A stretch of 64,000 nt of DNA, taken from contig NIVC01001271.1 of assembly GCA_002269645.1 (NCBI GenBank), positions 62,001-126,000 on the forward strand, in the 5' to 3' direction. Source of the stretch: Macrostomum lignano (taxonomy: Eukaryota). Positions within the stretch are counted from its first letter, which is position 1. Each line of letters starts with the position of its first letter. The notes beneath the pieces are model-generated. The model made no database searches, was not told the origin of the DNA, and was given only the letters and a program-made list of their open reading frames with translations. Shown here piece by piece: positions 3,001 to 36,920 of this stretch. The translations under genes were made by a program, and so were the position numbers.

Positions 3001-6000
3001 GCGGGTCTGAGGTTGCTGTTGAGTAGCTAAGGGATTATCGAACACAAAGCAGTTTTCCAGTCCCTGAGCAGTTTCACTAGTTTAGTTATAAAGGCGGAAA
3101 AGATGGAAGCTGAGACACACCCTAGCAGTCCGGGTGTAGCAACTCGAGTCTGTTAAGTAGGGAAAATGCGGATTTCGGGTATTTTGAAGTTGAAAATTTT
3201 AACTTGAATCGTTGAAGGCTTAAGATTCGAGCTGAAGCATTCAATAATAATGATGGACTGATTTCACCTGCCCCAATTGGGTTAGATGTGCAACCGACAG
3301 CTCAGCCGCAGCTATTGCACGGGCGCATCTGAAGACTGCGTACGGCTGTTCAGTCCAAGGACTGGGGGGGGGGTCGCCACACACACCCTCAATTACCCCA
3401 GCTAATGCTGGCACCCATTTTACAGCTGGGTGAACTGAAGCAATGCAGAGTTAAGTCTCAAGTGCTCAAGGACACAAATTGTTCCAGTAGAATCGGGAAT
3501 CGAACCCCTGACCCTTCAAGTCGTGAGTCCGACGCTCTTAACCACTAGGCTACAACCCCTGTACTGCATTTAGATTCGAAAATAAACCAAAGGCAGTGTC
3601 GGTTGTCACTTCAGGGAGCCCGACATTTGACTGGGGTCAGTTTCGGTCAGGGCTTAAGGTTAGGGTTTTGGTCAAATAACGACAGCCAAATGCCACCCAA
3701 TTAACCTGGCGGAGGGAGACTTCAGTTGCTTAAAAGATACCATTAAAACCGTAATTAATGATCTGAAAAGTGTAAAAATGATTCATGGCACAGTTAAAGG
3801 AGAATTTGCTGCGTCGAATGAAGCTTTCTAGACGTAATTGACTGCGTCATTTGAAACATATCCGAGAAATTTATAAGAGCTTGATTTTCGAATACGATTG
3901 TTGGATGGAGGGTTCTTCACTGCCTGTAGGAAAACTCATAGGACCCAATTCTTCATTAGGTCAACAGAAAACTGGGGGGGGGGTGAGCACAGAAGCCAAA
4001 CTGCAGGTGGTTGGTCTCAACGACCTGCGCAAACCTAAATGAACTCTCCATCTATGGTCGCCAAGTGTGCAGCAGATTCTATCTTAGATCCGCATGCCCG
4101 CCCCTGTGCCAATACTAAAACTGCGGCTATGCGGTTTTTTTTCTTATTTCCCATCGCCCGTGAGACTCTTCCGTGTTCAAACAAAAGCGATGGAAGCCGC
4201 CACGACCGACAAGTGAGTGAAAAAGCAAGCTATAGAGCTATACGCAGAAGTCCGCCCCAGTTTTCTTTCCCCCTGTCAACAAGAATTTGACCGGGGAACC
4301 AAGTCTACTTTTCCAGGTTTCTGGTTCTTGAAGAAGAAAGAACTGTATGCTTAGTGTCACTTTACGGTTAGTGTCTATATTTCTGCAGCTCCTGTCGGTT
4401 TAGATTAGGCATATACTGCAGGCGAAGAGTCAATTCTCAATTTCGTTTAATTGGTAAACGGTAGTCTACTGTCTGACACTGGTCGTACTTATGCGTTTAA
4501 GAGAAGTTCAAGTCAGTATCTCTGTTGCCTTTTGGGCCTGTGACTTGCAGAGTCGGTGTCTCCGATGCCTTTTGGGTGTGTGACTTGCAGAGTCGGTGTA
4601 TCCGATGCCTTTTGGGCCTGTGACTTGCAGAGTCGGTGTCTCCGATGCCTTTTGGGTGTGTGACTTGCAGAGTCGGTGTCTCCGATGCCTTTTGGGTGTG
4701 TGACTTGCAGAGTCGGTGTATCCGATGCCTTTTGGGTGTGTGACTTGCAGAGTCGGTGTCTCCGATGCCTTTTGGGTGTGTGACTTACAGAGTCGGTGTC
4801 TCCGATGCCTTTTGGGTGTGTGACTAGCAGAGTCGGTGTATCCGATGCCTTTTGGGCCTGTGACTTGCAGAGTCGGTGTCTCCGATGCCTTTTGGGTGTG
4901 TGACTTGCAGAGTCGGTGTCTCCGATGCCTTTTGGGTGTGTGACTTGCAGAGTCGGTGTCTCCGATGCCTTTTGGGTGTGTGACTTGCAGAGTCGGTGTC
5001 TCCGATGCCTTTTGGGTGTGTGACTTGCAGAGTCGGTGTCTCCGATGCCTTTTGGGTGTGTGACTTGCAGAGTCGGTGTCTCCGATGCCTTTTGGGCGTG
5101 TGACTTGCAGAGTCGGTGTCTCCGATGCCTTTTGGGTGTGTGACTTGCAGAGTCGGTGTCTCCGATGCCTTTTGGGTGTGTGACTTGCAGAGTCGGTGCC
5201 TCCGATGCCTTTTGGGTGTGTGACTTGCAGAGTCGGTGTCTCCGATGCCTCTTGGGTGTGTGACTTGCAGAGTCGGTGTATCCGATGCCTTTTGGGTGTG
5301 TGACTTGCAGAGTCGGTGTCTCCGATGCCTTTTGGGTGTGTGACTTGCAGAGTCGGTGCCTCCGATGCCTTTTGGGTGTGTGACTTGCAGAGTCGGTGTA
5401 TCCGATGCCTTTTGGGTGTGTGACTTGCAGAGTCGGTGCCTCCGATGCCTTTTGGGTGTGTGACTTGCAGAGTCGGTGCCTCCGATGCCTTTTGGGTGTG
5501 TGACTTGCAGAGTCGGTGTATCCGATGCCTTTTGGGTGTGTGACTTGCAGAGTCGGTGTCTCCGATGCCTTTTGGGTGTGTGACTTGCAGAGTCGGTGCC
5601 TCCGATGCCTTTTGGGTGTGTGTGACTTGCAGAGTCGGTGTATCTGATGCCTTTTGGGCCTGTGACTTTTAGAGTCGGTGTCTCCGATGCCTTTTGGGTG
5701 TGTGACTTGCAGAGTCGGTGTCTCCGATGCCTTTTGGGTGTGTGACTTGCAGAGTCGGTGTATCCGATGCCTTTTGGGTGTGTGACTTGCAGAGTCGGTG
5801 TCTCCGATGCCTTTTGGGTGTGTGACTTGCAGAGTCGGTGTATCCGATGCCTTTTGGGTGTGTGACTTGCAGAGTCGGTGTCTCTGATGCCTTTTGGGCG
5901 TGTGACTTGCAGAGTCGGTGTCTCCGATGCCTTTTGGGTGTGTGACTTGCAGAGTCGGTGTATCCGATGCCTTTTGGGTGTGTGACTTGCAGAGTCGGTG

Positions 6001-9000
6001 TCTCCGATGCCTTTTGGGTGTGTGACTTGCAGAGTCGGTGTATCCGATGCCTTTTGGGTGTGTGACTTGCAGAGTCGGTGTATCCGATGCCTTTTGGGTG
6101 TGTGACTTACAGAGTCGGTGTCTCTGATGCCTTTTGGGTGTGTGACTTGCAGAGTCGGTGTATCCGATGCCTTTTGGGTGTGTGACTTGCAGAGTCGGTG
6201 TCTCCGATGCCTCTTGGGTGTGTGACTTGCAGAGTCGGTGTATCCGATGCCTTTTGGGTGTGTGACTTACAGAGTCGGTGTCTCTGATGCCTTTTGGGTG
6301 TGTGACTTGCAGAGTCGGTGCCTCCGATGCCTTTTGGGTGTGTGACTTGCAGAGTCGGTGTATCCGATGCCTTTTGGGTGTGTGACTTGCAGAGTCGGTG
6401 TCTCCGATGCCTTTTGGGTGTGTGACTTGCAGAGTCGGTGCCTCCGATGCCTTTTGGGTGTGTGACTTGCAGAGTCGGTGTATCCGATGCCTTTTGGGTG
6501 TGTGACTTGCAGAGTCGGTGCCTCCGATGCCTTTTGGGTGTGTGACTTGCAGAGTCGGTGCCTCCGATGCCTTTTGGGTGTGTGACTTGCAGAGTCGGTG
6601 TATCCGATGCCTTTTGGGTGTGTGACTTGCAGAGTCGGTGTCTCCGATGCCTTTTGGGTGTGTGACTTGCAGAGTCGGTGCCTCCGATGCCTTTTGGGTG
6701 TGTGTGACTTGCAGAGTCGGTGTATCTGATGCCTTTTGGGCCTGTGACTTTTAGAGTCGGTGTCTCCGATGCCTTTTGGGTGTGTGACTTGCAGAGTCGG
6801 TGTCTCCGATGCCTTTTGGGTGTGTGACTTGCAGAGTCGGTGTATCCGATGCCTTTTGGGTGTGTGACTTGCAGAGTCGGTGTCTCCGATGCCTTTTGGG
6901 TGTGTGACTTGCAGAGTCGGTGTATCCGATGCCTTTTGGGTGTGTGACTTGCAGAGTCGGTGTCTCTGATGCCTTTTGGGCGTGTGACTTGCAGAGTCGG
7001 TGTCTCCGATGCCTTTTGGGTGTGTGACTTGCAGAGTCGGTGTATCCGATGCCTTTTGGGTGTGTGACTTGCAGAGTCGGTGTCTCCGATGCCTTTTGGG
7101 TGTGTGACTTGCAGAGTCGGTGTATCCGATGCCTTTTGGGTGTGTGACTTGCAGAGTCGGTGTATCCGATGCCTTTTGGGTGTGTGACTTACAGAGTCGG
7201 TGTCTCTGATGCCTTTTGGGTGTGTGACTTGCAGAGTCGGTGTATCCGATGCCTTTTGGGTGTGTGACTTGCAGAGTCGGTGTCTCCGATGCCTCTTGGG
7301 TGTGTGACTTGCAGAGTCGGTGTATCCGATGCCTTTTGGGTGTGTGACTTACAGAGTCGGTGTCTCTGATGCCTTTTGGGTGTGTGACTTGCAGAGTCGG
7401 TGCCTCCGATGCCTTTTGGGTGTGTGACTTGCAGAGTCGGTGTCTCCGATGCCTCTTGGGTGTGTGACTTGCAGAGTCGGTGTATCCGATGCCTTTTGGG
7501 TGTGTGACTTACAGAGTCGGTGTCTCTGATGCCTTTTGGGTGTGTGACTTGCAGAGTCGGTGCCTCCGATGCCTTTTGGGTGTGTGTGACTTGCAGAGTC
7601 GGTGTATCTGATGCCTTTTGGGCCTGTGACTTTTAGAGTCGGTGTCTCCGATGCCTCTTGGGTGTGTGACTTACAGAGTCGGTGTCTCTGATGCCTTTTG
7701 GGTGTGTGACTTTTAGAGTCGGTGTCTCCGATGCCTCTTGGGTGTGTGACTTACAGAGTCGGTGTCTCCGATGCCTTTTGGGTGTGTGACTTTTAGAGTC
7801 GGTGTATCCGATGCCTTTTGGGTGTGTGACTTGCAGAGTCGGTGTCTCCGATGCCTTTTGGGTGTGTGACTTGCAAAGTCAGTGCCTTTTGGGCCTGTGA
7901 CTTTTAGAGTCGGTGTCTCCGATGCCTCTTGGGTGTGTGACTTACAGAGTCGGTGTCTTTGATGCCTTTTGGGCCTGTGACTTTTAGAGTCGGTGTCTCC
8001 GATGCCTCTTGGGTGTGTGACTTACAGAGTCGGTGTCTCTGATGCCTTTTGGGTGTGTGACTTACAGAGTCGGTGTCTCTGATGCCTTTTGGGTGTGTGA
8101 CTTTTAGAGTCGGTGTCTCCGATGCCTTTTGGGTGTGTGACTTTTAGAGTCGGTGTCTCCGATGCCTCTTGGGTGTGTGACTTACAGAGTCGGTGTCTCC
8201 GATGCCTTTTGGGTGTGTGACTTTTAGAGTCGGTGTATCCGATGCCTTTTGGGTGTGTGACTTGCAGAGTCGGTGCCTCCGATGCCTTTTGGGTGTGTGT
8301 GACTTGCAGAGTCGGTGTATCTGATGCCTTTTGGGCCTGTGACTTTTAGAGTCGGTGTCTCCGATGCCTCTTGGGTGTGTGACTTACAGAGTCGGTGTCT
8401 CTGATGCCTTTTGGGCCTGTGACTTTTAGAGTCGGTGTCTCCGATGCCTCTTGGGTGTGTGACTTACAGAGTCGGTGTCTCCGATGCCTCTTGGGTGTGT
8501 GACTTACAGAGTCGGTGTCTCTGATGCCTTTTGGGTGTGTGTGACTTGCAGAGTCGGTGCCTCCGATGCCTTTTGGGTGTGTGTGACTTGCAGAGTCGGT
8601 GTATCTGATGCCTTTTGGGCCTGTGACTTTTAGAGTCGGTGTCTCCGATGCCTCTTGGGTGTGTGACTTACAGAGTCGGTGTCTCCGATGCCTTTTGGGT
8701 GTGTGACTTTTAGAGTCGGTGTCTCCGATGCCTCTTGGGTGTGTGACTTACAGAGTCGGTGTCTCCGATGCCTCTTGGGTGTGTGACTTACAGAGTCGGT
8801 GTCTCTGATGCCTTTTGGGTGTGTGACTTTTAGAGTCGGTGTCTCCGATGCCTCTTGGGTGTGTGACTTACAGAGTCGGTGTCTCTGATGCCTTTTGGGT
8901 GTGTGACTTACAGAGTCGGTGTCTCTGATGCCTTTTGGGTGTGTGACTTTTAGAGTCGGTGTCTCCGATGCCTCTTGGGTGTGTGACTTACAGAGTCGGT

Positions 9001-10332
9001 GTCTCCGATGCCTTTTGGGTGTGTGACTTTTAGAGTCGGTGTATCCGATGCCTTTTGGGTGTGTGACTTGCAGAGTCGGTGTCTCCGATGCCTTTTGGGT
9101 GTGTGACTTGCAAAGTCAGTGCCTTTTGGGCCTGTGACTTTTAGAGTCGGTGTCTCCGATGCCTCTTGGGTGTGTGACTTACAGAGTCGGTGTCTCTGAT
9201 GCCTTTTGGGCCTGTGACTTTTAGAGTCGGTGTCTCCGATGCCTCTTGGGTGTGTGACTTACAGAGTCGGTGTCTCTGATGCCTTTTGGGTGTGTGACTT
9301 ACAGAGTCGGTGTCTCTGATGCCTTTTGGGTGTGTGACTTTTAGAGTCGGTGTCTCCGATGCCTTTTGGGTGTGTGACTTTTAGAGTCGGTGTCTCCGAT
9401 GCCTCTTGGGTGTGTGACTTACAGAGTCGGTGTCTCCGATGCCTTTTGGGTGTGTGACTTTTAGAGTCGGTGTATCCGATGCCTTTTGGGTGTGTGACTT
9501 GCAGAGTCGGTGTCTCCGATGCCTTTTGGGTGTGTGACTTGCAGAGTCGGTGTCTCCGATGCCTTTTGGGCGTGTGACTTGCAGAGTCGGTGTATCCGAT
9601 GCCTTTTGGGTGTGTGACTTGCAGAGTCGGTGTCTCCGATGCCTTTTGGGCGTGTGACTTGCAGAGTCGGTGTCTCCGATGCCTTTTGGGCGTGTGACTT
9701 GCAGAGTCAGTGCCTCCGATGCCTTTTGATTTTCTTTCTTACTCAGTCAGTGAAAACAAATAGCTTTTTCTTGTTGAAATGCTCAATTTACTCCGGGCTG
9801 CTTTGTGCACCTTTTCATCTGTCTCATCTTGAAGAAGTGAGAGCAAGGCAGAACGTTAACCCGTGTTAAAATACATGCAGGAACCCTGCACGAGGAAGTG
9901 TTCCGGTCGATATTCGCTCAGTTCTTCCCCCAAGGCGACGCCACCGCTTATTCCCGCTTCATTTTCTCGGCCTTCGACCGGTCACGCACGGGCGCCCTGA
10001 CATTTGCCGACTTCGCCCGCGGCCTCTCAACAATCTGTCGCGGCAGCCAGAACGAGAAGCTGCGCTGGATTTTCAACATGTACGACATCAACCAGGACGG
10101 AGAGATCACCAAACGGGAGCTGAACGAAGTTTTAAACGGTATCTACGACCTACTAGGCAGGATGGTGCGCCCGCCGGTGGACGAGCTCACCGTGCTTGAG
10201 CACGCCGACGCTGCATTCGAGCGAATGGACGCCGACGGCGACGGCGTAATCTCGTTCGAAGATTTTGAGGCGTATTTTCAGCGGAATCCGCAGATGCTGC
10301 AGTGCTTGGCCTACTTTGACACGGCCATGTGA
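1..10332 (+). CDS. KCNIP: Kv channel-interacting protein (KChIP/calsenilin, neuronal calcium sensor family), probably 5'-partial. Exons 1..127 and 9881..10332, one 9.75 kb intron
   Basis: Frame 1 reads ...THFNNKELRALYRGFKTECPE-G. Donor G|GTGAGT at 127/128, acceptor ATGCAG|GA at 9880/9881. Continues G-TLHEEVFRSIFAQFFPQGDA...EKLRWIFNMYDINQDGEIT...FERMDADGDGVISFEDF, matching the KChIP core and EF-hands. AATAAA at 11261. Confidence 0.93.
224..1097. repeat. 52-bp minisatellite (~17 copies) in KChIP intron
   Basis: Unit GATCTCAGAGATTCTCTCGATAAACTGGGAGACTCTCCTCCCGGAGGTGTCC; period read directly (301 to 353). Confidence 0.95.
2333..2869. repeat. 30-bp minisatellite (~18 copies) in KChIP intron
   Basis: Unit CCAGTCCCGCTCATGCAGCATCATTCCCTC; explains the PLMQHHSLPV ORF. 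Confidence 0.95.
3243..3560 (-). mobile_element. tRNA-derived SINE with a CORE/MIR-like central domain and (ATT)n tail
   Basis: Minus strand shows A-box TAGCCTAGTGG and B-box GGTTCGATTCC, then TGTGTCCTTGAGCA...ACTTAACTCTGCATTGCTTCAGTTCACCCAGCTGTAAAATGGGT (resembles the CORE domain), ending CATCATTATTATTG. Confidence 0.8.
4530..9728. repeat. 40-bp minisatellite, ~130 copies (5.2 kb), with higher-order structure
   Basis: Unit CCGATGCCTTTTGGGTGTGTGACTTGCAGAGTCGGTGTCT; contiguous copies, no spacers. Confidence 0.97.
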
Positions 10333-10395
10333 ATAGAGACGACCCTGACGCGTTTTTACAACTGATACTGGACGCCAATCAGAGGCCTCAGGGGA

Positions 10396-11075
10396 AAGTA
10401 GTCAACCTGAGGATTGGGGAAGTGGTCAACCTGAGGATTGGGGAAGTGGTACACCTGAGGATTGGGGAAGTGGTCAACCTGAGGATTGGGGAAGTGGTCA
10501 ACCTGAGGATTGGGGAAGTGGTCAACCTGAGGAGGATTGGGGAAGTGGTCAACCTGAGGATTGGGGAAGTGGTCAACCTGAGGAGGATTGGGGAAGTGGT
10601 CAACCTGAGGATTGGGGAAGTGGTCAACCTGAGGATTGGGGAAGTGGTACACCTGAGGATTGGGGAAGTGGTACACCTGAGGATTGGGGAAGTGGTCAAC
10701 CTGAGGATTGGGGAAGTGGTACATCCGAGGATTGGGGAAGTGGTACACCTGAGGATTGGGGAAGTGGTCAACCTGAGGATTGGGGAAGTGGTCAACCTGA
10801 GGATTGGGGAAGTGGTCAACCTGAGGATTGGGGAAATGGTGCACCTGAGGAGGATTGGGGAAGTGGTCAACCTGAGGATTGGGGAAGTGGTCAACCTGAG
10901 GATTGGGGAAGTGGTTAACTTGAGGATTGGGGAAGTGGTTAACTTGAGGATTGAGGAAGTGGTTAACTTGAGGATTGGGGAAGTGGTCAACCTGAGGATT
11001 GGGGAAGTGGTTAACTTGAGGATTGGGGAAGTGGTTAACTTGAGGATTGGGGAAGTGGTCAATCTGAAGATCTGG
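10396..11075. repeat. 24-bp G-rich minisatellite (~28 copies) in the predicted KChIP 3' UTR
   Basis: Unit GAAGTGGTCAACCTGAGGATTGGG; lies between stop 10332 and AATAAA 11261. Confidence 0.93.
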
Positions 11076-11260
11076 GGAGCGATGAAGAACTACAAAGGTA
11101 ACGGCAATTAATTAACTGATATTTATCTAATTCGTTTAAAGGCAATTGACTTAGTAGTAGAAAAGTATTCAACACAGCAGAAAAACCTTTTAATCAGCAA
11201 ATTTTTGTCAACAAGTATTAATATTCTAATAATTTTTTTAACTAACAAGCACATCGCAAC

Positions 11261-14186: not shown

Positions 14187-14910
14187 CCCAGTCAGGAATC
14201 GGAGATAACAGGAATCGGTTTGAAGTCTTTTATCTCGGGGTTTAATTCGACGATATGTATCGAAAGTTTATTTTACAAACCTAAAAAACTGATTAGGATG
14301 TGCTGTACATAAATTATCTTGAATAAAACTCTTACTACTATTAGTAGTGCAGATTTATTTTCTAAATAGTTTTTAGAATTTCCAACCTTGTTATGCTTTT
14401 TTTCCTAAGGATAAAAAACAAAGCCAAGCAAGAACAACAAACAATGGATGAGAAAAAATAAATAACTTTTTAATAATTTTTTTTCAATTGTTTTACAGTA
14501 TATTTGTGAACTTTTTTTGTTAAAAAAACAGAACTGAAAAGAAAACAAGCTCACCTCTTGTCTACTTAAAGTAGGAAAATAAAACAGGAGTAAAGAAAGC
14601 TTATATATGGCATTAATCTGCCTGTGTCGAATATTCAGAGACACAAAATATAACAAAAAGATGACTAATTAAGATGTTCCACTATAAGCTTTTATGACGA
14701 TTAGTTAAGAACGATTAGTAAAATAAATTAAAGTGTCGCATCAGAAACCAAAATCAGGACACCGTTCGTTTGTCAAAGCCTTTGAAACCGTACATAGGCG
14801 ACCTTTAAAGGAAACCAACAGCCTCAATAATATAACACAAAGTTAAGCGATTAGTACTCGTATCTGCACAGGTTTTGACAGCCGAAGTAGTTGCAGCAGC
14901 TAGCTTATGA

Positions 14911-15430
14911 CAGGATCACACAGACAGACATACCATAGACTGTGTGGATCACACAGACAGGCACACCATAGACTGTGTGGATCACACAGACAGACATACC
15001 ATAGACTGTGTGGATCACACAGACAGACATACCATAGACTGTGTGGATCACACAGACAGGCACACCATAGACTGTGTGGATCACACAGACAGGCACACCA
15101 TAGACTGTGTGGATCACACAGACAGGCACACCATAGACTGTGTGGATCACACAGACAGGCACACCATAGACTGTGTGGATCACACAGACAGGCACACCAT
15201 AGACTGTGTGGATCACACAGACAGGCACACCATAGACTGTGTGGATCACACAGACAGGCACACCATAGACTGTGTGGATCACACAGACAGGCACACCATA
15301 GACTGTGTGGATCACACAGACAGGTACACCATAGACTGTGTGGATCACACAGACAGGTACACCATAGACTGTGTGGATCACACAGACAGACATACCATAG
15401 ACTGTGTGGATCACACAGACAGGCATACTA
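14911..15430. repeat. 33-bp minisatellite (~16 copies) between TNIP-like and GPATCH1
   Basis: Unit CACACCATAGACTGTGTGGATCACACAGACAGG, containing the inverted repeat CTGTGTG-GAT-CACACAG. Confidence 0.95.
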
Positions 15431-16049
15431 TAGTAGATTTCAGTTAGAATAATTGTTTATTACTATACTGAAATGGGCAACTTTTAATACGTTTTCACTG
15501 CATTCGGCTGACAAAAACAGTTGTTATTATTAAGGCAACTGTACACAAAATATATGTAAAAACGCTAAGCGCTCAATAGAAAAAAAACAAATTAAAACGA
15601 AACAAAAGACTTTACTACAGAAAACAAAAAACACACCTTGGATAGATACTGAGTATGGATACATTCTGAATAGTGATTTGAAGTACAGAAATTAATTTTT
15701 CTTACTCTAGCTGGATAAATATTAAGCGATAAACGAAGGGGGGAGAAACCGGAAACTCTTCAACTTAGATCAGGAGCAATTGTAAACAGCAATAGCAAAT
15801 CGAAACTGCTACTAGTAGTATGATATAGGCATAGGCATATTAATACATATGTTAGTAACGATAATTGTTAGAAAACAACATCAGACAAAAAAGGTTAGAT
15901 CCGCAACTGGACAGAAAATCTGGATTAAAAAAATAACCGACAGCCTAATATAATCAGCTCGAATCAAAATGGAAATTTTTGCCACCATAACGCAAAATAT
16001 GGCATTTTAGTGCAGAATCTAACTTTAGTCGGCTCAATGTGATGGGTTG

Positions 16050-17165: not shown

Positions 17166-18715
17166 GCGACCCGCGGCGCGCTCCTAGCCTGGGCAAGCTG
17201 ATTTCGCAGCTCGGCGAGCTGGCGATCGCGATCTTCGTTCATCTTCTCGTGGCGAGCCTTCTGGCTGGACCAGAACTCGTGCCACTGCTTGTTCACGGAC
17301 TTGAGCTGGAGTTGAGCGGCACGGATGGCAATAATAGTCATAATTGTGAGCACAGGTGCGCAGGCGCGCACTCATGCACACGCTCACACAGGGTGTACAG
17401 CGGCCCTTTGACTTGCTAATCGTCCGGCATGTACACTCTCTGTGCCTTCAGGGTTGACCCTTATGGGTGTCATAGAGTGAGTAATACTCTAATAAGTAAT
17501 GCCATAAAGCAAATAAAATACCTCTTCATTTTCTTTTCTCAGGCGTTCCAGTTCACGATTCTGCTGCGGAGGCGTGTAAGGCATGTTTTGATACACCTGC
17601 TGCTGCTGCTGCTGCTTCTGTCTGGCCTGCGGATGCTGCAGCTTTAGTGGCTGCCACTTTTCCGGTGCGGCTTCAGTTCCGCCAACCTGAAAAGGGAAAA
17701 AACGAACAAACGGGGTCAGGAATTGGAGGGGCAATCAATGTACAGGGGAGGTAATTATTGTTAAATGGGGTGATGCATATTGAGGACGGGGTTACGGGTT
17801 GGAAGGGCACTGTACATTGAAGACGGGGTTATGCATTGGAGAGGAAATGTACATTGGGGGGCGGGTTCAGGGTTTGGAGGGGTAACGTACATTGGGGGAC
17901 GGGGTTATGCATTGGAGAGGAAATGTACATTGGGGGGCGGGTTCAGGGTTTGGAGGGGTAACGTACATTGGGGGACGGGGTCAGGGATTGGAGGGGCAAT
18001 GTACATTGGGGGACGGGGTTAGAGATTGGAGAGGAAATGTACATTGGGGAAGGGGTTAGGGTTTGGAGGGGTAACGTACATTGGGGGACGGGGTCAGGGA
18101 TTGGAGAGGAAATGTACATTGGGGGACGGGGTTAGAGATTGGAGAGGAAATGTACGTTGGGTTACGGGGTTAGGGATTGGACAGGAAATGTACATTGGGG
18201 ACGGGATTAGGGTTTGGGAGGGGTAACGTACATTGGGGGACGGGGTCAGGGATTGGAGGAAATGTACATTGGGGACGGGGTTTAAAGTAGCATTGTACAT
18301 CAGAGATCAAAGAGACATTCGCGCTAACCGTCTCCCCCTGGTGCAGCAGGGCGTCCGCCTCGGCCAGGTGGGCAATAATACGCCTTAGGTCGACAATTTT
18401 CTCCGGCGAACGGAACAGCATTTTTAACGAAGCGTCCAGCATCTCCTGCGGGGAGGCCGGCGACGGGGCTTCCATAGTCCAGTCGTGGACGTCCCGGCCG
18501 CCAGCTGGCATGCCGCCGTCCGCGGCGTCGTCGTCTTCATCGTCCGTGTCGGCATTGCCGTTGCGATTGGCGTCAATGAGCTGCTGCGGGCAGGGCGCGT
18601 CGAGCAGGCTGAACTGCTGCTGGCCGTCAGCCCAGGGGTCCGGCTGCATCAGGTCCGGCTCGAACGAATCGTCCCGATCTCTCAAATTAGAAGCGGCTGC
18701 TGCTGCTGTGGCCAT
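16252..18715 (-). CDS. TNIP1: ABIN/TNIP-like ubiquitin-binding adaptor (AHD coiled coil + UBAN) with a C-terminal RanBP2/NZF zinc finger. Exons 18715..18329, 17686..17522, 17305..16922, 16653..16252
   Basis: All three introns are GT-AG, phase 0. Spliced product has ENEELKSVNKQWHEFWSSQK (cf. TNIP1/3 LLEVNKQWDQ), UBAN VLQAQAALYQEDFARERADRESAQARLAEL, and WKCEACTLENPATAHHCSVCD. The first donor (ACG|GTTAG) and the start codon are less certain. Confidence 0.75.
17770..18282. repeat. ~40-bp G-rich minisatellite filling TNIP-like intron 1
   Basis: Unit approx. AATGTACATTGGGGGACGGGGTTAGGGTTTGGAGGGGTAAC, with variants. Confidence 0.9.
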
Positions 18716-19319
18716 TGTGATTTTGCTGGATGATTTATTGAAAACCGAAAATTTGCTTTGCATGAATTATTACGGAAATAACAATTCGGCTTTGGACATT
18801 GCGAATATTTCCTCTGATAATTTATTTTTCTAGTGCTTCATAATAAAAAATGAATTAAAACTCAAACTGTAAATAAGTAAAGCTCTATATAGAGTAATAG
18901 AATTACATGGCTGCAATGTTTTTATTATCAGCGTACAATTTAAAAGTAGTGAATCGGAAAGACAAAGTAAAGATCAAATAAGTGACTGGTCGGATTGGCC
19001 TCACATTCTCATAATAATCAGCACATGTAACTTATTAAAACTAGGAATTTTTACCCACAGGCCACAGCTCGCCTCAGTTGCCTAATTCAAATTAACAGTT
19101 AACCTTTTGGAGGCCGAATTTATAAATGAAACGCACCGAGTCGAATGACAATACACAGATCAAGGTTATCTACGGAAGTAGAATTATTAAAAAGCATGCG
19201 CAAATGGTCTACATCAAGATTTACGAGTATAGAAGACTCTTTCATGAACGCAGGTAAACTGTTTGAAATGATCGATAAAAAGTTACATCAAAGGCCAAAT
19301 ATTATCCATATGGACTTTA

Positions 19320-19512
19320 AGGTTTTTGGAGAGGATTATCGAAGGTTTTAGGGAGGATTATCGAAGGTTTAGGGAGGATTATCGAAGACTTTTGGGGAGG
19401 ATTATCTAAGGTTTTTGGGGAGGATTATCGAAGGTTTTGGGGAGGATTATCGAAGGTTTTTAGGCAGGATTATCGAAGGTTTTGGGGAGGATTATCGTCA
19501 TCGAAGACTTTT
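19320..19512. repeat. ~21-bp minisatellite between D2HGDH and TNIP-like
   Basis: Unit approx. GAGGATTATCGAAGGTTTTGG. Confidence 0.85.
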
Positions 19513-19637: not shown

Positions 19638-22491
19638 TCATTCATCGGGCAGCACCTTGTAGGGATTCATAATCCCGTTAGGATCCAGCAGCCGTTTCAC
19701 TTCGGCCATGACTCGAACAGCAAAATCGGCCTTACTATGCCGAATGTACTGACTCTTCTTGAGCCCCAGCCCGTGCTCAGCGCTAACCGAGCCACGCCGG
19801 TCCCTGACCCAATCGAACACGTGCGGCTCGATCAGCTCCAACACTTTGGCATCGAATTTTGGCGTAGTAAAATTCAAATGCAGATTGCCGTCGCCAAGGT
19901 GACCGTAGCCGGCTGTCCGAATAACCCGGCCGTCCAGGCGGGTCCGCATGTGCTCAACTAGGCGGTAGATGTCGGCCAGCGGCAAGCTCACGTCGTATTT
20001 GTACTCGTAGCCGTCCACTAGCAGGGATTCGACAATGCGCTCGCGCAGAGACCACAGGTGAGCAAATTGCCCAGCATCCTGGGCTACTGTGCCGTCGGTT
20101 GCGCAACCATCCATCGACATCACTGACTCGATGAAGCCGTCCAGCTTCTCTCGATCGTGCGTCTCGTTAGAGCCGGATGTCTCGGCTAGCACATAGAAAC
20201 TGTGCTCGCCCAGGGGGCAGGAGAGGCCGAGGTTCTTTTTGACAGCTCGCATGGACTCCGAATCGATGAACTCGAATGCGGACAGGATCTCGCCCAGGCT
20301 GCGTCTGGCCAGCCGGTAAGTGTCCAGCACGGCCTGCGGGATGGCCTGGTCTATGTTAGTTGAAGCCTAAGCCTATTATAGAGTTAAGCAGAGCTGGCCG
20401 CGGTTAGTACACAAGGCCCTCTACACTCTCAGCACTAAAAATTCAATTCTACCTACAAAAGATCCTAATCCTATTGTAAAGATCCCAATCCTACTATACA
20501 GATCCCAATCCTACTATACAGATCCCAATCCTACTATACAGATTCCAATCCTACTATACAGATCCCAATCCTACTATACAGATCCCAATCCTACTATACA
20601 GATCCCAATCCTACTATACAGATCCCAATCCTACTATACAGATCCCAATCCTACTATACAGATCCCAATCCTACTATACAGATCCCAATCCTACTTTACA
20701 GATCCCAGTCCTACTATACAGATCCCAATCCTACTATACAGATTCCAATCCTACTATACAGATCCCAATCCTACTATACAGATCCCAATCCTACTATACA
20801 GATCCCAATCCTACTATACAGATCCCAATCCTACTATACAGATCCCAATCCTACTATACAGATCCCAATCCTACTATACAGATCCCAATCCTACTTTACA
20901 GATCAAGTCTCAAGATCAAATTCAAGGACTCCAAATGCTAATTTTTAAACTGGAACAAACCTGAAAGGAATCCAGGCCGAGAAAGGCCAGCTGCACAGAC
21001 TTGGGCCTGGCCGGGCACAGTATAGCCGCTTTAGTAATGATACCAAGCGTTCCCTCGCTACCAATGAGCAGCTGTTTAATATCGTATCCGGTGTTGTCTT
21101 TCCGCAGAGTAGTCAGGCAGTCCAGCACCTGTCCGGTAGGCAGCACAGCCTCCAGACCCAAGGTGGTGCCGCGCAGGCTGCCGTACCGCAACAGGCGAAG
21201 GCCGCCAGCATTCGTGGCCAAGTTGCCGCCAATCTGACAGCTGCCCTTGGCGCCAAGGTCCAGCGGCATCATCAGGCCTTGGCTAGCCGCCTCCCTGTCC
21301 AACTGTTCGAGTACGCAGCCGGCCTCGGCAACAAGCACGCCGGACACTGGGTCGATGCTAAGCAGGCTGTTCATGCGGCTAGTTGAGATCACGATCTCGT
21401 CGAATAGAGGCACCGAGCCGCCAACCAGGCCGGTGTTGCCGCCCTGCGGTACTACGGCTAAACGGCGCTTATTGCAGTGACGGACTATGGCGCTCACCTG
21501 GGATTTCGGTAGGTTAAGAGTTTGTGACATTGTGACATTGGTATTGTTTGTTATTAGAGGTATTACTGCCCATTCCGCCGAATCCCCTAAGCAGGAACAC
21601 AAGCGCAAAGATATGTACGTAGTCATACGCAAAGGCACACACTCACACCAGAGAGTGTTCAGAAATCTAATGACAACTTTCCTTTTAAATGATTGTAAAC
21701 TTTTCTTGTCATTTCTAATATTTCCCAATGAAAACTGTACCTAGACCAGGAGCGTCCCAGAGTCGCTTGCGTCGCCCCAGCGTCTCTACTGGTAACACAG
21801 GTAAAATAGGAAAGAAAGTCACTCTAGACGACTCTAAAATGACGAGATGTCACGGAACAAGTTTTCAAAAAGAGTTGCCTACACAGTGTTCATTTGGAGG
21901 CGTTTTACTGGATCTGTGACTCTGGGGCGCTTCTATAGTGACTTTTAGTCTAAGGCGCATCTGCGTCACTTCATAAAATTAGAATCGCATTTCGAATTTA
22001 TAACAACTACTACTGGAGTCTACTTGAGTTAGTAGAAAGCTATGCGCTACTCTTGGGTGCAACTTTTTTTGCGACTCTCGCTTTTACAGTCGCATTACAA
22101 TCATTCGAATCGTTAAAAAAGTCACAAGAGTCGCCCCAGACCCGCCTAGAGTAAAGGTTTCAACGGTTTTTATATTTAATCTCGTTTAAAATGGCACTCG
22201 AACCTCTTCCGTAGTTTTTGGCCGCAGCACCAGCTGACCCTGGCCACGGCATATCCGCAGCCAGTCAATATTGTAGGACAGCACCTCGTCCGCATCTTTG
22301 ATCACGTGATCGCCGCCAACAATAGCCTCGAATGCGGATACGTCAGCGTCAGTTAATTGACTGAACGCGCCGCGCTTTATCCCGGGATGAATTTCGGTGG
22401 TCAGCGGGGGCAGCCCGCCTGAAGCTGAAGAGGCTGGTCGGGCAAGAAGGGCGAAAGCGCCAGCAGATGCGGGTCGCCGCCTGAGCAGCAG
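19638..22491 (-). CDS. D2HGDH: D-2-hydroxyglutarate dehydrogenase, mitochondrial (FAD-linked). Exons 22491..22204, 21497..20961, 20333..19638; initiator Met is not present locally
   Basis: [20 protein letters not shown]|[54 protein letters not shown]|[40 protein letters not shown]. Both introns are phase-0 GT-AG. The 5' boundary is inferred from acceptor CTCTGCTTCCTCAG| at 22492. Confidence 0.92.
20460..20904. repeat. 20-bp minisatellite (~22 copies) in D2HGDH intron 2
   Basis: Unit GATCCCAATCCTACTATACA. Confidence 0.95.
21725..22150 (+). mobile_element. Dispersed non-autonomous repeat (MITE-like) in D2HGDH intron 1; related copy at 53020..53295 (-)
   Basis: AATGAAAACTGTACCTAGACCAGGAGCGTCCCAGAGTCGCTT aligns with the reverse complement of ~53250-53290 (GATGAAAATGGTACCTAGGCCAAGAAGCATCCCAGAGTCGCTT). 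Internal inverted GAGTCGC/GCGACTC motifs. Ends not defined. Confidence 0.6.
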
Positions 22492-22614
22492 CTGAGGAAG
22501 CAGAGATGCGGCTCGGCTGGCCAGGAAGAGGCGGCGTCAGAATGAGATTGAATATTTTTCTGAGATTTCTAAATGATTCCTAAAGCCATACTGATATGAC
22601 TCCTGAAGCTAATT

Positions 22615-22975
22615 GATGGCTTAGCAACCAATAACCTGCCCTAGCAACTGATGCTTAACCCTAGCAGCCAATATCCTACCTTAGCAATCATTGCTTAACC
22701 CTAGCAACCAATGACCTGCCTTAGCAACCATTGCTTAACCCTAGCTACATACATCCTGCTTTAGCAACCAATGCTTAACCCTAGCAACCAATGACCTGCC
22801 TTAGCAACCATTGCTTAACCCTAGCTACATACATCCTGCTTTAGCAACCAATGCTTAACCCTAGCAACCAATAACCTGCCTTAGCAACCGATGCTTAACC
22901 CTAGCTACATATATCCTGCTTTAGCAACCAATGCTTAACCCTAGCAACCAATATTCTGCCTTAGCAACCAATGCC
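22615..22975. repeat. 40-bp minisatellite (~9 copies) between FAU and D2HGDH
   Basis: Unit approx. TTAGCAACCAATGCTTAACCCTAGCAACCAATGACCTGCC, with alternating variants. Confidence 0.9.
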
Positions 22976-23196
22976 CTCTCACTCACAACTAATAATGCCC
23001 TTCCTTAAATACCAATTCCTTCTCTAAAGCTAGCAACACTAATTATGAAGTTATCAAAAAACTAACCTACACAATTAAAAAGAGTCATTAAAGTTATTAA
23101 GTTTCCTATCTTTAACAAGCTTTTACATGACAACAAAGAACAGAAAAGAACCAACAAGTCATTCATACGCCAGGAACCGCGTGCGGCATGATCTTG

Positions 23197-23202
23197 TTTA
23201 TT
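23197..23202 (-). promoter_or_regulatory. Candidate polyadenylation signal of FAU, followed by a U-rich element
   Basis: AATAAA on -, ~120 nt past the stop; downstream GACTTGTTGGTTCTTTTCTGTTCTTTGTTGTC. Confidence 0.6.
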
Positions 23203-23323: not shown

Positions 23324-24586
23324 TCAAGAGTTGGCGTTGGGTCCGCGACGACGACCGCCCGGCAGGTTGACAGTGGCCACGAATCGCTTGTTGTACTGAA
23401 TGCGGCGCTTAGCCCGGCCAGTTTTGGCCTTGTGCTTCTCCTGCTTGGCCACTTTTGGCGTCTGGCCGCGCACTTTGCCAGCTCGGGCCAGCGAGCCGTG
23501 CACCTTGCCGCCGGGTAGCAACGCCTGGATGTCCAGAGTGGTGCCTTCGGTGGCCACCTGTGGTACAGCGGAGGGGGTAGGGGGGGGGTGGGACATGACA
23601 CTTGCTTGATACAAATCAAAACCGTTTCTGTCATTTTAACCTAGAGTTCAGTTGTTCTTAATCAGATCCCACAATAGCTGTCAATCCAATCAGATCCCAC
23701 AATAGCTGTCAATCCAATCAGATCCCACAATAGCTGTCAATCCAATCAGATCCCACAATAGCTGTCAATCCAATCAGATCCCACAATGGCTGTCAATCGA
23801 ATCAGATCCCATAATGGCTGTCAATCCAATCAGATCCCACAATGGCTGTCAATCCAATCAGACTTCACAATGGCTGTCAATCCAATCAGATCCCACAATG
23901 GCTGTCAATCCAGTCAATTATCAGATCCCACAATAGCTGTCAATCCAATCAGATCCCACAATAGCTGTCAATCCAATCAGATCCCACAATGGCTGTCAAT
24001 CCAGTCAATTATCAGATCCCACAATAGCTGTCAATCCAATCAGATCCCACAATGGCTGTCAATCCAATCAGATCCCATAATGGCTGTCAATCCAATCAGA
24101 TCCCACAATGGCTGTCAATCCAATCAGACTTCACAATGGCTGTCAATCCAATCAGATCCCACAATAGCTGTCAATCCAGTCAATTATCAGATCCCACAAT
24201 GACTGTCCAATCAGATCCCACAATAGCTGTCAATCCAATCAGATCCCACAATAGCTGTCAATCCAATCAGATCCCACAATAGCTGTCAATCCAATCAGAT
24301 CCCACAATAGCTGTCAATCCAATCAGATCCCACAATAGCTGTCAATCCAATCAGATCCCCAAAATAAGTGCTAAGTTAGCAAGCCAAGCATGCACTATGC
24401 AAAACTCACAGTCGCAATGGTGGCATCATCGTCCAGAGCTTCACCGGCAGCGGCAAACACAGCCAGGCCTAGAGGAGAGGCGCCGCACTGTTCGCCAGCC
24501 CAGGTCTTCAGGTCGGCAACGGTGTCCTCGGCGGCAAACTGCTTGGCGATGGTGTCGCCAGTAGGCAGGGAGACAAACACGGGCAT
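23324..24586 (-). CDS. FAU: FUBI-ribosomal protein S30 (eS30) fusion. Exons 24586..24410 and 23557..23324, 136 aa
   Basis: Ubiquitin-like [10 protein letters not shown]...[10 protein letters not shown]|[17 protein letters not shown] followed by [24 protein letters not shown]...GPNANS. Donor ACT|GTGAGT, acceptor CACAG|GTG. Confidence 0.96.
23660..24360. repeat. 28-bp minisatellite (~25 copies) filling the FAU intron
   Basis: Unit AATCAGATCCCACAATAGCTGTCAATCC. Confidence 0.95.
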
Positions 24587-25669
24587 GATTTCTGGCAGGT
24601 TCTCTTTGCGTTGGATTGCTACTAGGAGCTGAAGATTGATGAGATTAAAAAGTACTCCAGAGTGCAGATTAAAGAAGACTGACAATAGTCAGTGTTCCAG
24701 CTTCATGTTACTTGTACTTGATGCTCACATATAACATGTTTTCTAGACAATTGCCATTATAGACAATGGAATATTCCATATTTGTACTATAGTACTAGAT
24801 AGGACAAAATCTAGTGTTATATATTAATAAATATTGGCCTTAGGATACACCAATATTATTAGGATCATTAACCTTTCTGTAATGTTGCCGTTGTTTAGAT
24901 TATTTACATAAGCCCTAAAGGCTTGGGTTATTTTTTTTTAAATACAGGCTATTGTTCTATTATAAAGATCATGCAAAATATATGCTAGAAAAATTGATAT
25001 ATTAAAAAATAAGTGTTACCACTCTAGAAAGAGAGCAAGATTGGTACTCAAGAGCTGTAGCCCCTCCCTATTCCTCCCTTGACACAGCCACTGGTGCCAA
25101 CTATAGGCCAATGTCAACTGTATATTGGTAACCCAAAAAAATTATATTGGGAATTTTTTGGTATGTCCTATATCTCTATATGCTCTTAATAGCTAGAATC
25201 CTCCAATATATATGCTAGAAGCCATCTGTCTCTTTGTATGTGTATAAGATATGCCAAGCAAAAAGCATAAGTTGCACCAGTTTTAAATCATCTATGCTCT
25301 TGTTGTGTAGTAGTTTTATCTACTGCCTTTTTGTCTACTAGTAGATGAAATACGAGGTAGCATTTTCTAATAAAATATAGGACATAACATTGTCCCAGTC
25401 TTGTATGTATACCCAGAACTGGATTAAAGTGAATGATATATAATTTATTGTCTGCATCAATGTATAAAAGTTGTTTTATATCTTTGCAATAGTTTTATAT
25501 TTTTGTGTATATACCTTATTGGAAGGAAACCTTATTTAGCCCTTATTCAATCATTCGAGTCAGTGATATTTTTAACCTTTCATTGGTCATGGATCTTGCA
25601 CTTTATTTCCAAAATAAAAAAAACAATAAATGAAGCTGGTTGAAATACCAAACTATTTAAGTGCTACAA

Positions 25670-35590: not shown

Positions 35591-36129
35591 TGTACATAGC
35601 AAATGTACAGTGTTTTGGAATAACTTTATTTATAGCCTTCTCTGCACCCCAAGAGTGGAGAGGCTACGTTTAGCCATAACAGTTTAGTGAGAAATTCTAA
35701 CCACTGCCCTCCCCTCTGTATTGGCAAACTCTGCAGCAGTTTAACACTGGATGGCAATTGGCAAATCGAGGGAATCCAGCATGGTTTGTAAAAGCTAAAG
35801 ATTTATGAAAAGGCGATGCGATGCAATGCAATACAACCCTACTAAATTAGGCACACCAGGGAAATTTTAGGTTTCTTTTAAAGGTACTGTGTAAAATGGC
35901 CTCCTAAGAAATGCGTATTTCCTTGGTTTTTAGACTGATGCAAACTGCAATGGAGCTGAAGATACACAAATTCCTTTCAGGACTGCAAATTGGCAAGAAA
36001 GATGACGTGATCAAAGCATGAGAACAACCATGAGAGTACTATGTCCCACAAACTGGCTTTCCAAGCAGGGATGGGCAGACTTTTACCTCAAAGGCCAGAT
36101 AAAGAATCCAGCTCATAGCTGAGGGGCAG

Positions 36130-36828
36130 ATGAAAGTGGAAAGAAGAAGGAATAGACGATTCGAAGAGAGGAGAGGCAACAGAGGGGATAAAAGAAAAGA
36201 TAAAAGATAATAGAAGAGATGAGGGGGTGAGGACGATGAGAGAGAGGGGAGAAGAGGGGAGAGAGGAAAAGCGAGAGGAGAGAGTAGAGATGAGAGAGCA
36301 GAGAGCTGCAGATGAGAGGAGAGAGGAGACAGCAGAGAGGAGAGCAGAGAGGAAACAGGTGAAAGAAGAGATGAGAGAGTAAAGGGAAGAGAGAAGAGAT
36401 AAAGATACATCTCTACATCTCTAAGGTTCTAGAGATGAGAGAGGTGGAAGGAGAGATAAGAGATAACGGAGAGAGGAGAGTGGAGTGAGAGAAGAGAGAG
36501 AGACAGAGTATAGAAAAGGGAAGAGAAGAGAAAAGAAGAAAGGAGAAAGGAGAAAGGAAAGTGAGGAGTCAAAAGAGGGGAAAGAAAAGAGTACAGAGGA
36601 GAGAGGTGAGAGAACATATAAGACAGAGATGCCAGATTAAAGAGGGGGGATGAGAGAGCAGAGACGAGAGTAAACAGAAAAAAGATGGGAGAGTAGAGAG
36701 AACAGAGGAGAGGTTACAGAGACGAGAGGAGAGAGGAGAGACAAAGGTAGAGAAGTGAGTGAGGAGAGAGGAGCGGAAAGAAGAGAATGGAGAGGGGAGA
36801 GAGAGAAAGAGAGATAAGAGAGAAAGAC

Positions 36829-36920
<92 letters not shown>

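What the first reader, a model, noticed from the sequence alone, without database searches (positions are those of the whole stretch)
22204..22560. D2HGDH has no genomic start codon; the spliced-leader AUG would supply it in frame
Seen: the D2HGDH frame runs upstream from the conserved region to an in-frame TGA (~22539) without any ATG. A pyrimidine-rich acceptor ATCTCTGCTTCCTCAG| at 22492 is in phase 0; adding only ATG gives [27 protein letters not shown]..., an Arg-rich, acid-free presequence suited to a mitochondrial enzyme. Established: flatworm SL exons end in AUG, and in Schistosoma mansoni this AUG initiates some proteins. Inference: trans-splicing completes this CDS. The acceptor-like AGs before FAU, TNIP, GPATCH1, the SH3 gene and the PNP gene (5, 10, 94, 7 and 10 nt from their ATGs) would all put the SL AUG out of frame. 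Alternative: a 21-nt cis mini-exon ATGCCGCACGCGGTTCCTGGC|GTATGA at 23189..23169, which would overlap the FAU cleavage site.
Basis: partly seen in the sequence, partly recalled or inferred. Interest (0 to 1): 0.8.

Follow-up and report, generated by a model that had tools for sequence, protein, structure and literature searches.

The report
Flatworm D2HGDH gene lacking its own ATG
In the flatworm Macrostomum lignano, the gene for the mitochondrial enzyme D-2-hydroxyglutarate dehydrogenase has no start codon of its own and most likely gets it from the AUG at the end of the trans-spliced leader RNA, a mechanism already shown in schistosomes, so this is a tidy new example and not a new phenomenon.

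Summary
The window is Macrostomum lignano (Mlig_3_7 contig NIVC01001271.1). D2HGDH lies on the minus strand in three exons: 22491-22204, 21497-20961 and 20333-19638. Exon 1 has an in-frame TGA at 22539-22537 and no in-frame ATG before codon 138, which lies in exon 2. The only in-phase AG is the acceptor TCTCTGCTTCCTCAG|CTG at 22492. It is one of the nine strongest acceptor-like sites in 128 kb.

All three genomic copies keep this layout with intact CDSs. All eight public protein models are 5'-partial and lack a Met. The M. lignano spliced leader (SL) is 35 nt and ends in ATG. An SL RNA gene found in a metagenome reads ...TTGCATG|GTAAGA.

Joining the SL at 22491 gives a 507-aa protein, [14 protein letters not shown]..., with an Arg-rich, acid-free N-terminus of normal length.

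No transcript showing the SL joined to D2HGDH could be reached, so trans-splicing at this site remains inferred (about 0.78). Rival readings are an unannotated upstream cis exon and non-AUG initiation.

SL-AUG initiation has been known in Schistosoma since 2006 and has been noted for Macrostomum. This is a new member of a known kind, of modest interest.

The parts
22204..22491 (-). D2HGDH exon 1 (96 codons, [13 protein letters not shown]...KTTEE). It has no ATG in frame. The donor is GAG|GTTCGA at 22204/22203.
   Evidence: 99% identical to M. lignano D2HGDH entries
22492..22507 (-). 3' splice acceptor: pyrimidine tract plus CAG (ATCTCTGCTTCCTCAG|). This is the proposed SL trans-splice site, in phase 0.
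   Evidence: one of 9 such sites in 128 kb; identical in L001-L003
22537..22539 (-). In-frame TGA that closes the frame 16 codons upstream of the acceptor.
   Evidence: conserved in all three copies
22492..23190 (-). Presumed outron and FAU-D2HGDH spacer (about 700 nt). It includes a tandem repeat of 40/80-nt period at 22622-22974.
   Evidence: its role as an outron is inferred
20961..21497 (-). D2HGDH exon 2 (acceptor CCCAG|GTGAGC, donor CAG|GTTTGT). It holds the first in-frame Met of the gene (SRMNSLL).
19638..20333 (-). D2HGDH exon 3 through the TGA stop (19640-19638).
23197..23202 (-). AATAAA poly(A) signal of the upstream same-strand gene FAU (stop codon 23326-23324).
23169..23189 (-). 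Rival candidate cis mini-exon ATGCCGCACGCGGTTCCTGGC|GTATGA. It lies in the expected FAU cleavage zone.
   Evidence: the donor is GTATTA in copy L003; absent from all eight public gene models

Best explanation
D2HGDH of Macrostomum lignano is an SL-AUG-dependent gene.

**Proposed mechanism.** The pre-mRNA comes either from a promoter of its own or from read-through of the upstream same-strand gene FAU, operon-style. It carries an outron that ends in the acceptor TCTCTGCTTCCTCAG at 22492. The spliceosome joins the 35-nt spliced leader (CGGTCTCTTACTGCGAAGACTCAATTTATTGCATG) to base 22491. The leader's last three bases then become codon 1 of a 507-codon [30 protein letters not shown].... The Arg-rich, acid-free N-terminus serves as the mitochondrial presequence of a normal FAD-linked D-2-hydroxyglutarate dehydrogenase.

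**Shown here:** the gene structure, the absence of an ATG, the acceptor, its phase, its conservation in all copies, and the SL sequence.

**Inferred:** that the SL is actually joined here, and that ribosomes start at its AUG.
For: - **Species and SL.** The protein is 99% identical to M. lignano D2HGDH entries, and the window is identical to NIVC01001271.1. [quoted passage not shown] The SL RNA gene on metagenome contig L008 reads ...TTGCATG|GTAAGA. It has three hairpins and a U-rich Sm-like site.
- **No genomic start.** An in-frame TGA sits at 22539. There is no in-frame ATG until codon 137 of the 506 genomic codons. The first ATG inside exon 1 (22295) is out of frame.
- **Acceptor.** It has a 92% pyrimidine tract plus CAG and is one of 9 such sites in 128 kb. 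About 0.001 are expected by chance in the in-phase positions available. It is the only in-phase AG.
- **Functional gene.** Three genomic copies keep the same layout and have intact 1521-nt CDSs. Synonymous/non-synonymous differences between pairs are 4/1, 4/3 and 2/2.
- **Public models.** All eight models (3 GenBank, 5 UniProt) are 5'-partial. They start 2-12 codons upstream of the acceptor inside the 45-nt gap, and none has a Met or an upstream exon. The annotation pipeline trimmed the whole SL, including its ATG, before mapping, which explains the partial CDSs.
- **Product.** The N-terminus has 4 Arg and no Asp/Glu in the first 30 residues, with the first acidic residue at position 34. There are 74 residues before the conserved N.DW anchor. 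In 107 Met-starting homologues the median is 86 and the interquartile range 77-93.
[quoted passage not shown] The Macrostomum genome paper calls the SL's final ATG a 'translation start codon' (PMC10468722).
- **Operon-like setting.** FAU lies upstream on the same strand. The spacer is about 700 nt, or about 350 nt after removing the 353-nt tandem repeat. That is under the published 1-kb operon threshold.
Against: - No SL-D2HGDH junction sequence could be retrieved. The protein collection holds no RNA-seq-derived M. lignano D2HGDH. None of the six metagenome contigs carrying the SL is D2HGDH.
- None of the GenBank models starts exactly at 22491, as would be expected if the pipeline had cut the transcript at an SL peak there. 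They start 6, 12 and 27 nt upstream. The annotated starts of the neighbouring FAU and TNIP-like genes do not sit at acceptors either, so this is weak evidence.
- The acceptor matches the published motif [T/C]TNCAG at 5 of 6 positions (CCTCAG).
- The SL AUG has a weak Kozak context (U at -3, C at +4).
- In all five SL-capped environmental transcripts the SL AUG opens only a short ORF of 2-41 codons, and the gene has its own ATG. SL-AUG use is therefore the exception.
Confidence: 0.78

Rival explanations
1. The acceptor at 22492 is used in cis. A short, unannotated upstream exon in the FAU-D2HGDH spacer supplies the ATG. Candidates are the reader's 21-nt mini-exon 23189-23169 (MPHAVPG-) and ATG...|GT stretches inside the tandem repeat, such as 22834-22796, 22754-22716 and 22691-22680.
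For: Sixteen phase-0 ATG...|GT candidates exist between FAU and the acceptor. The gene's own two donors (GAG|GTTCGA and CAG|GTTTGT) are non-consensus, so weak donor sequence is no argument against a candidate. N-termini built from these candidates are equally presequence-like.
Against: None of the eight transcript-based public models contains such an exon. All of them run colinear with the genome for 6-36 nt upstream of the acceptor and stay Met-less. No candidate matches GTRAG fully. The mini-exon begins 8 nt after FAU's AATAAA, inside the expected cleavage zone, and its donor is degraded to GTATTA in copy L003. The repeat-borne candidates differ between copies.
Confidence: 0.1
2. The mRNA is not trans-spliced, or it retains its outron. 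Translation starts at a near-cognate codon such as CUG, either just upstream of the acceptor (22527-22525 or 22503-22501) or at it (22491-22489).
For: Public models include 6-36 nt of sequence upstream of the acceptor, so RNA covering that stretch exists. The 15 codons between the TGA and the acceptor (RRLFLASRAASLLPQ) are also Arg-rich and acid-free. Several in-frame CTGs are present.
Against: All of these CTGs have a pyrimidine at -3, which is a poor context. The CTG at 22527 is CAG (Q) in the ML2-derived models (FQAS versus FLAS). The presequence-like translation is what a C/T-rich splice tract would give anyway. RNA upstream of the acceptor is expected from unspliced pre-mRNA in genome-guided assemblies.
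Confidence: 0.06
3. The locus does not make a full-length enzyme. It is either a decaying duplicate or is translated only from the first in-frame Met in exon 2, giving an N-terminally truncated, non-mitochondrial protein.
For: M. lignano is a recent polyploid with many redundant copies (PMC8629364). No genomic start codon is present.
Against: All three copies keep a 1521-nt open frame with more synonymous than non-synonymous differences. The protein is 58-62% identical to animal D2HGDH over 94-100% of its length. Exon 1 encodes conserved N-terminal sequence. Starting at codon 137 would delete part of the FAD-binding domain, and that Met lies downstream of out-of-frame ATGs.
Confidence: 0.04

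Closest known systems
SL-AUG-initiated mRNAs of Schistosoma mansoni (Cheng, Cohen, Ndegwa & Davis 2006, J Biol Chem 281:733), later called 'slORFs' (PMC9851317)
   Same: Both are flatworms whose SL ends in ...UUGCAUG. The recipient exon starts at an acceptor in phase 0. No genomic in-frame AUG lies upstream of the conserved protein, so the SL's AUG would be the initiator Met.
   Different: This case is in a free-living, early-branching flatworm (Macrostomorpha), not a parasite. Neither the SL junction nor the initiation has been shown experimentally here. Whether D2HGDH is on the S. mansoni list could not be checked, because the paper is not held.
SL trans-spliced operons of M. lignano (Ustyantsev & Berezikov 2021, PMC8629364) and of nematodes
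   Same: The neighbours FAU and D2HGDH lie on the same strand. The repeat-adjusted spacer is about 350 nt, under the 1-kb threshold. The downstream gene begins at an acceptor with no paired cis donor.
   Different: In the classic operon role the SL only caps and separates cistrons. Here it would also supply coding sequence. Co-transcription with FAU is not shown.
Ordinary SL-trans-spliced Macrostomum-type mRNAs with their own ATG (environmental contigs L004-L007 and L009)
   Same: The same SL is joined directly after ...TTGCATG.
   Different: Those five transcripts have their own ATG 15-106 nt downstream, and the SL-AUG ORF stops after 2-41 codons. In D2HGDH the SL-AUG ORF would run 507 codons through a conserved enzyme.

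Membership tests
SL-AUG-dependent (slORF) flatworm mRNA | The organism has an SL RNA whose exon ends in AUG immediately before the GU donor. | tested here: met
   The M. lignano SL is CGGTCTCTTACTGCGAAGACTCAATTTATTGCATG (PMC8629364). An SL RNA gene with a 35/35 match followed by GTAAGA is on L008.
SL-AUG-dependent (slORF) flatworm mRNA | The first coding exon begins at a 3' splice acceptor. | tested here: met
   TCTCTGCTTCCTCAG|CTG at 22492 is one of 9 sites of that strength in 128 kb and is identical in three copies.
SL-AUG-dependent (slORF) flatworm mRNA | No upstream cis donor or exon is paired with that acceptor. | tested here: inconclusive
   No upstream exon appears in any of the eight public models. 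However, 16 sequence-level candidates cannot be excluded.
SL-AUG-dependent (slORF) flatworm mRNA | The SL AUG is in frame with the conserved ORF, and no genomic in-frame AUG is available. | tested here: met
   The acceptor is in phase 0, there is a TGA 16 codons upstream, and the first in-frame Met is at codon 137 of the 506 genomic codons.
SL-AUG-dependent (slORF) flatworm mRNA | The SL is physically joined to this exon in mature mRNA. | not testable with these tools
   No M. lignano RNA-seq or cDNA is reachable. The protein and contig look-ups found none.
SL-AUG-dependent (slORF) flatworm mRNA | Translation initiates at the SL AUG. | not testable with these tools
   This needs Ribo-seq or a reporter assay.
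D-2-hydroxyglutarate dehydrogenase, mitochondrial (FAD-linked oxidase) | FAD_binding_4 (PF01565) plus FAD-oxidase_C (PF02913) architecture, with high identity to annotated D2HGDH. | tested here: met
   Both domains are precomputed for the matching M. lignano proteins. The protein is 58-62% identical over 94-100% of its length to animal D2HGDH.
D-2-hydroxyglutarate dehydrogenase, mitochondrial (FAD-linked oxidase) | N-terminal mitochondrial presequence. | tested here: inconclusive
   Composition fits: 4 Arg, no Asp/Glu in the first 30 residues, first acidic residue at 34. Length is within the range of homologues. No dedicated predictor was available.
M. lignano operon (criteria of PMC8629364) | Adjacent same-strand genes with a repeat-adjusted intergenic distance under 1 kb. 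| tested here: met
   From the FAU AATAAA at 23202-23197 to the acceptor at 22492 is about 700 nt. Removing the 353-nt tandem repeat leaves about 350 nt.
M. lignano operon (criteria of PMC8629364) | The downstream gene is SL trans-spliced. | not testable with these tools
   Same gap as above: no SL-read data.

The most novel reading that the evidence does not exclude
D2HGDH is an obligate SL-AUG gene in all subgenome copies of a free-living, early-branching flatworm, probably expressed as the downstream cistron of a FAU operon. Trans-splicing would then be indispensable for the coding sequence of a conserved mitochondrial enzyme, not only for 5'-end processing. A whole class of Met-less '5'-partial' CDSs in the M. 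lignano annotation would in fact be complete genes whose first codon was trimmed away with the SL.
Probability: 0.7. Interest if true: 0.35.

Novelty: new member of a known kind. Interest (0 to 1): 0.3.

Why it matters
**Practical value.** The GenBank and UniProt entries for this gene (PAA70026.1 and relatives) are labelled partial and translate 2-12 codons of outron. The true product is probably a complete 507-aa precursor starting with the SL-encoded Met. The same correction may apply to other Met-less CDSs in M. lignano.

**Biological value.** It would add an example from outside the parasitic flatworms of a gene that has lost, or never had, a genomic start codon and depends on the spliced leader for it. 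That supports the view that the conserved AUG at the 3' end of flatworm SLs has a coding role. It does not open a new question. The mechanism was shown in Schistosoma in 2006 and is acknowledged by the Macrostomum community.

Tried and rejected
- **Direct transcript evidence.**
  - An exact look-up of the predicted MLLLRRR... protein found nothing in the 15-billion-protein collection. The 90% cluster holds only seven genome-derived, Met-less models.
  - An N-terminal 112-aa search returned nothing.
  - A 205-aa search returned no Macrostomum fragments.
  - I prepared ten alternative N-terminal variants but did not submit them. Any such protein would have fallen into the fully listed cluster.
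- **Supplementary gene tables.** No held file of the M. lignano papers mentions Mlig033996, Mlig010276 or D2HGDH. No paper mentions Macrostomum together with D2HGDH.
- **Papers not held.** Cheng 2006 and Wasik 2015 are not available.
- **SL gene in the window.** None, even with up to 3 mismatches.
- **Rfam.** No hit in the window or on L008.
- **Comparing copies.** The three genomic copies are 98% identical across the spacer, so the comparison cannot separate outron from coding sequence.
- **Scoring donors against GTRAG.** This cannot dismiss cis exons, because the gene's own donors also fail that consensus.
- **Presequence composition.** It does not discriminate between the SL-AUG N-terminus and the rival N-termini.
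- **Assembly error.** Rejected: three contigs plus the older assembly agree.
- **'SL does not end in AUG'.** Rejected.
Full report
**What is in the sequence.**
- The finding lies on the minus strand. Stop-free segments and splice junctions give a three-exon gene: exon 1 at 22491-22204, exon 2 at 21497-20961, and exon 3 at 20333-19638 including the TGA.
- The spliced 1521-nt frame encodes 506 residues. These are 99% identical to proteins named D-2-hydroxyglutarate dehydrogenase, mitochondrial, of Macrostomum lignano. They are 58-62% identical over 94-100% of their length to D2HGDH of many animals, with FAD_binding_4 and FAD-oxidase_C domains.
- The window is base-for-base identical to part of contig NIVC01001271.1 of assembly GCA_002269645.1, Mlig_3_7.

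- The exon-1 frame is closed by TGA at 22539-22537. It contains no Met down to the donor at 22204.
- The first in-frame ATG of the CDS is codon 137 of the 506 genomic codons, in exon 2. The first ATG within exon 1 (22295) is out of frame.
- The sequence ATCTCTGCTTCCTCAG|CTG places an AG at 22493-22492 with the next base in phase 0. It is the only AG in that phase between the TGA and the conserved part of the protein.
- Sites this strong are rare. A 12-nt tract that is at least 90% pyrimidine followed by CAG occurs nine times in the 128 kb of both strands. One of the others is a bona fide internal acceptor of the neighbouring TNIP-like gene. The chance expectation for such a site in the 16 in-phase positions available is about 0.001.

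**Not an artefact.**
- Two further contigs of the same assembly (L002 and L003) carry the same FAU-D2HGDH-TNIP-like-GPATCH1 gene order.
- All three copies have the identical TGA, no ATG and the identical acceptor.
- Their CDSs are intact. They differ by 4/1, 4/3 and 2/2 synonymous/non-synonymous changes.
- Every public version of the protein is Met-less and partial: three GenBank entries and five UniProt entries. They begin PQLLL..., LLPQLLL..., [12 protein letters not shown]... or [15 protein letters not shown].... That is 2-12 codons upstream of the acceptor, and always inside the 45-nt gap after the TGA.
- None contains an upstream exon.

**Does the host fit?**
- M. lignano has a single 35-nt spliced leader, CGGTCTCTTACTGCGAAGACTCAATTTATTGCATG. 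An estimated 30-39% of its genes are trans-spliced, and the top acceptor motif is [T/C]TNCAG (PMC8629364 and PMC5730564).
- I confirmed the SL independently. A scan of metagenome contigs with its last 21 nt found six contigs.
- Five of them are transcripts with the SL at their 5' end (L004-L007 and L009). One (L008) is an SL RNA gene in which the full 35-mer is followed by GTAAGA, three predicted hairpins and a U-rich Sm-like site.
- The Mlig_3_7 annotation pipeline trimmed the SL from reads and transcripts before mapping, and ORFs were then called by TransDecoder. Any gene whose start codon is the SL's ATG would therefore come out as a 5'-partial CDS, as seen here.

**The inferred mechanism.**
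- Joining the SL to base 22491 creates AUG-CUG-CUG-CUC-AGG..., a 507-codon ORF.
- Its N-terminus, [27 protein letters not shown], has four Arg and no acidic residue in the first 30 positions. The first acidic residue is at position 34.
- There are 74 residues before the conserved N.DW anchor. In 107 Met-starting homologues the median is 86 and the interquartile range 77-93. The product would therefore be complete, not truncated.
- FAU lies upstream on the same strand. From its AATAAA (23202-23197) to the acceptor is about 700 nt, of which 353 nt is a 40/80-nt tandem repeat. The repeat-adjusted distance is well under the 1-kb operon threshold used for this species. D2HGDH may therefore be the downstream cistron of a FAU operon. 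This step is an inference.

**What I could not show.**
- No sequence with the SL joined to D2HGDH was reachable. The predicted protein is not in the 15-billion-protein collection, and its 90% cluster holds only the seven genome-derived models.
- Searches with the N-terminus found no Macrostomum fragments.
- None of the six SL-bearing metagenome contigs is D2HGDH.
- Supplementary tables of the M. lignano papers that are held do not list the gene.
- The GenBank CDSs start 6, 12 and 27 nt upstream of the acceptor, not exactly at it. The annotated 5' ends were therefore not set by an SL peak at 22491. The annotated starts of FAU and the TNIP-like gene do not coincide with acceptors either, so this says little.

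**Rivals.**
- *A cis exon supplying the ATG.* Sequence alone cannot exclude it. There are 16 phase-0 ATG...|GT candidates in the spacer, and the gene's own donors (GAG|GTTCGA and CAG|GTTTGT) are themselves non-consensus.
  - Against it, no public transcript-based model has such an exon.
  - The repeat-borne candidates vary between copies.
- *Non-AUG initiation at an in-frame CUG.* This is possible. But all the CUGs have a pyrimidine at -3, and one is CAG in another haplotype.
- *A dead or truncated gene.* This is unlikely given three intact, conserved copies.

- The distances and phases quoted for FAU, the TNIP-like gene, GPATCH1 and the SH3 gene are arithmetically right. The acceptors themselves were chosen by eye.
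- For FAU a better site (CTTCAG|, a perfect match to the published motif) lies 42 nt upstream of the ATG. It would be in frame with no intervening stop.
- The contrast 'all the others are out of frame' is therefore not established.
- The five environmental SL-capped transcripts make a better contrast. Each has its own ATG 15-106 nt downstream, and the SL-AUG ORF ends after 2-41 codons.

**Comparison with what is known.**
- SL-AUG initiation was demonstrated for Schistosoma mansoni. The SL AUG is in frame in 28% of trans-spliced cDNAs, and more than 40 cDNAs need it (Cheng et al. 2006, as summarised in PMC9851317).
- All reported flatworm SLs end in AUG (PMC12582326).
- The paper on the M. cliftonense and M. 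hystrix genomes calls the SL's final ATG a 'translation start codon' and deliberately left it on the reads (PMC10468722).
- The D2HGDH case is therefore a new, well-formed member of a known kind. Its practical use is to correct the public gene models. It also flags that Met-less partial CDSs in this genome may be complete.

**Verdict.**
- Observation: confirmed.
- Interpretation: probably right (about 0.78) but not demonstrated.
- Novelty: new member of a known kind.
- Interest: 0.3.

Noticed in passing
window 22622-22974 (also L002 and L003): A tandem repeat of 40/80-nt period (about 8.8 copies of TAGCAACCAATATCCTGCCTTAGCAACCAATGCTTAACCC) fills half of the FAU-D2HGDH spacer. Copy L003 lacks one 40-nt unit and has diverged units.
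   Followed up: partly
window 20460-20904, 23660-24359 and 19319-19497: More tandem arrays lie in and around the gene. A 20-nt unit repeats 22 times in D2HGDH intron 2. A 28-nt unit repeats 24 times in a FAU intron. A 23/45-nt unit sits in the D2HGDH 3' region.
   Followed up: no
L004-L007 and L009 (JGI Ga0316592); L008:625-733 (Ga0302322): Environmental contigs carry the exact M. lignano spliced leader. Five are SL-capped mRNAs: VDAC-like, IDH-like, CNBP-like, GAPDH-like and a 369-aa kinase-like ORF, named from ORF sequence by eye. One is a complete SL RNA gene. Macrostomum-type flatworm sequence is therefore present in these metagenome or metatranscriptome samples. Rfam has no family that matches the SL RNA.
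   Followed up: partly
window 24586-24628 (-): FAU has a motif-perfect acceptor, CTTCAG|, 42 nt upstream of its ATG. It is in phase 0 with no stop in between, so an SL joined there would add 15 residues to FUBI. The GenBank FAU CDS is also 5'-partial, starting at 24613, nine codons before the ATG.
   Followed up: partly
window 22497-22491 (L001:10001); L002 and L003 equivalents: The public protein models PAA70026.1, PAA70035.1, PAA69983.1 and five UniProt entries translate 2-12 codons of the presumed outron (..SRAASLLPQ) as protein and are flagged partial. They are probably mis-annotated complete genes.
   Followed up: yes
window 18374-18751 (-) versus L002:13892-16193 and L003:13727-16151: The TNIP/optineurin-like gene downstream of D2HGDH (weak CC2-LZ and RanBP zinc-finger hits) is annotated as 126 aa in this copy but as 461 and 458 aa in the other two. 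The gene models are inconsistent.
   Followed up: no
window 4500-9750 (-), 10350-11110, 14900-15460 and 36000-37350: Large tandem arrays with long open frames in several phases (for example units reading VTHPKGIGYTDSASHTPKRHRRHRLCKSHTQKAS) show strong GC and AT skew. They probably account for much of the compositional patchiness of the window.
   Followed up: no
window 22492-22536 (-): The 45 nt between the in-frame TGA and the acceptor are GC-rich, and the spacer shifts from AT-rich to GC-rich sequence at about 22540. They translate to an Arg-rich, acid-free peptide (RRLFLASRAASLLPQ). This is probably a by-product of the C/T-rich splice tract, but it is also compatible with a former or alternative upstream start.
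   Followed up: partly
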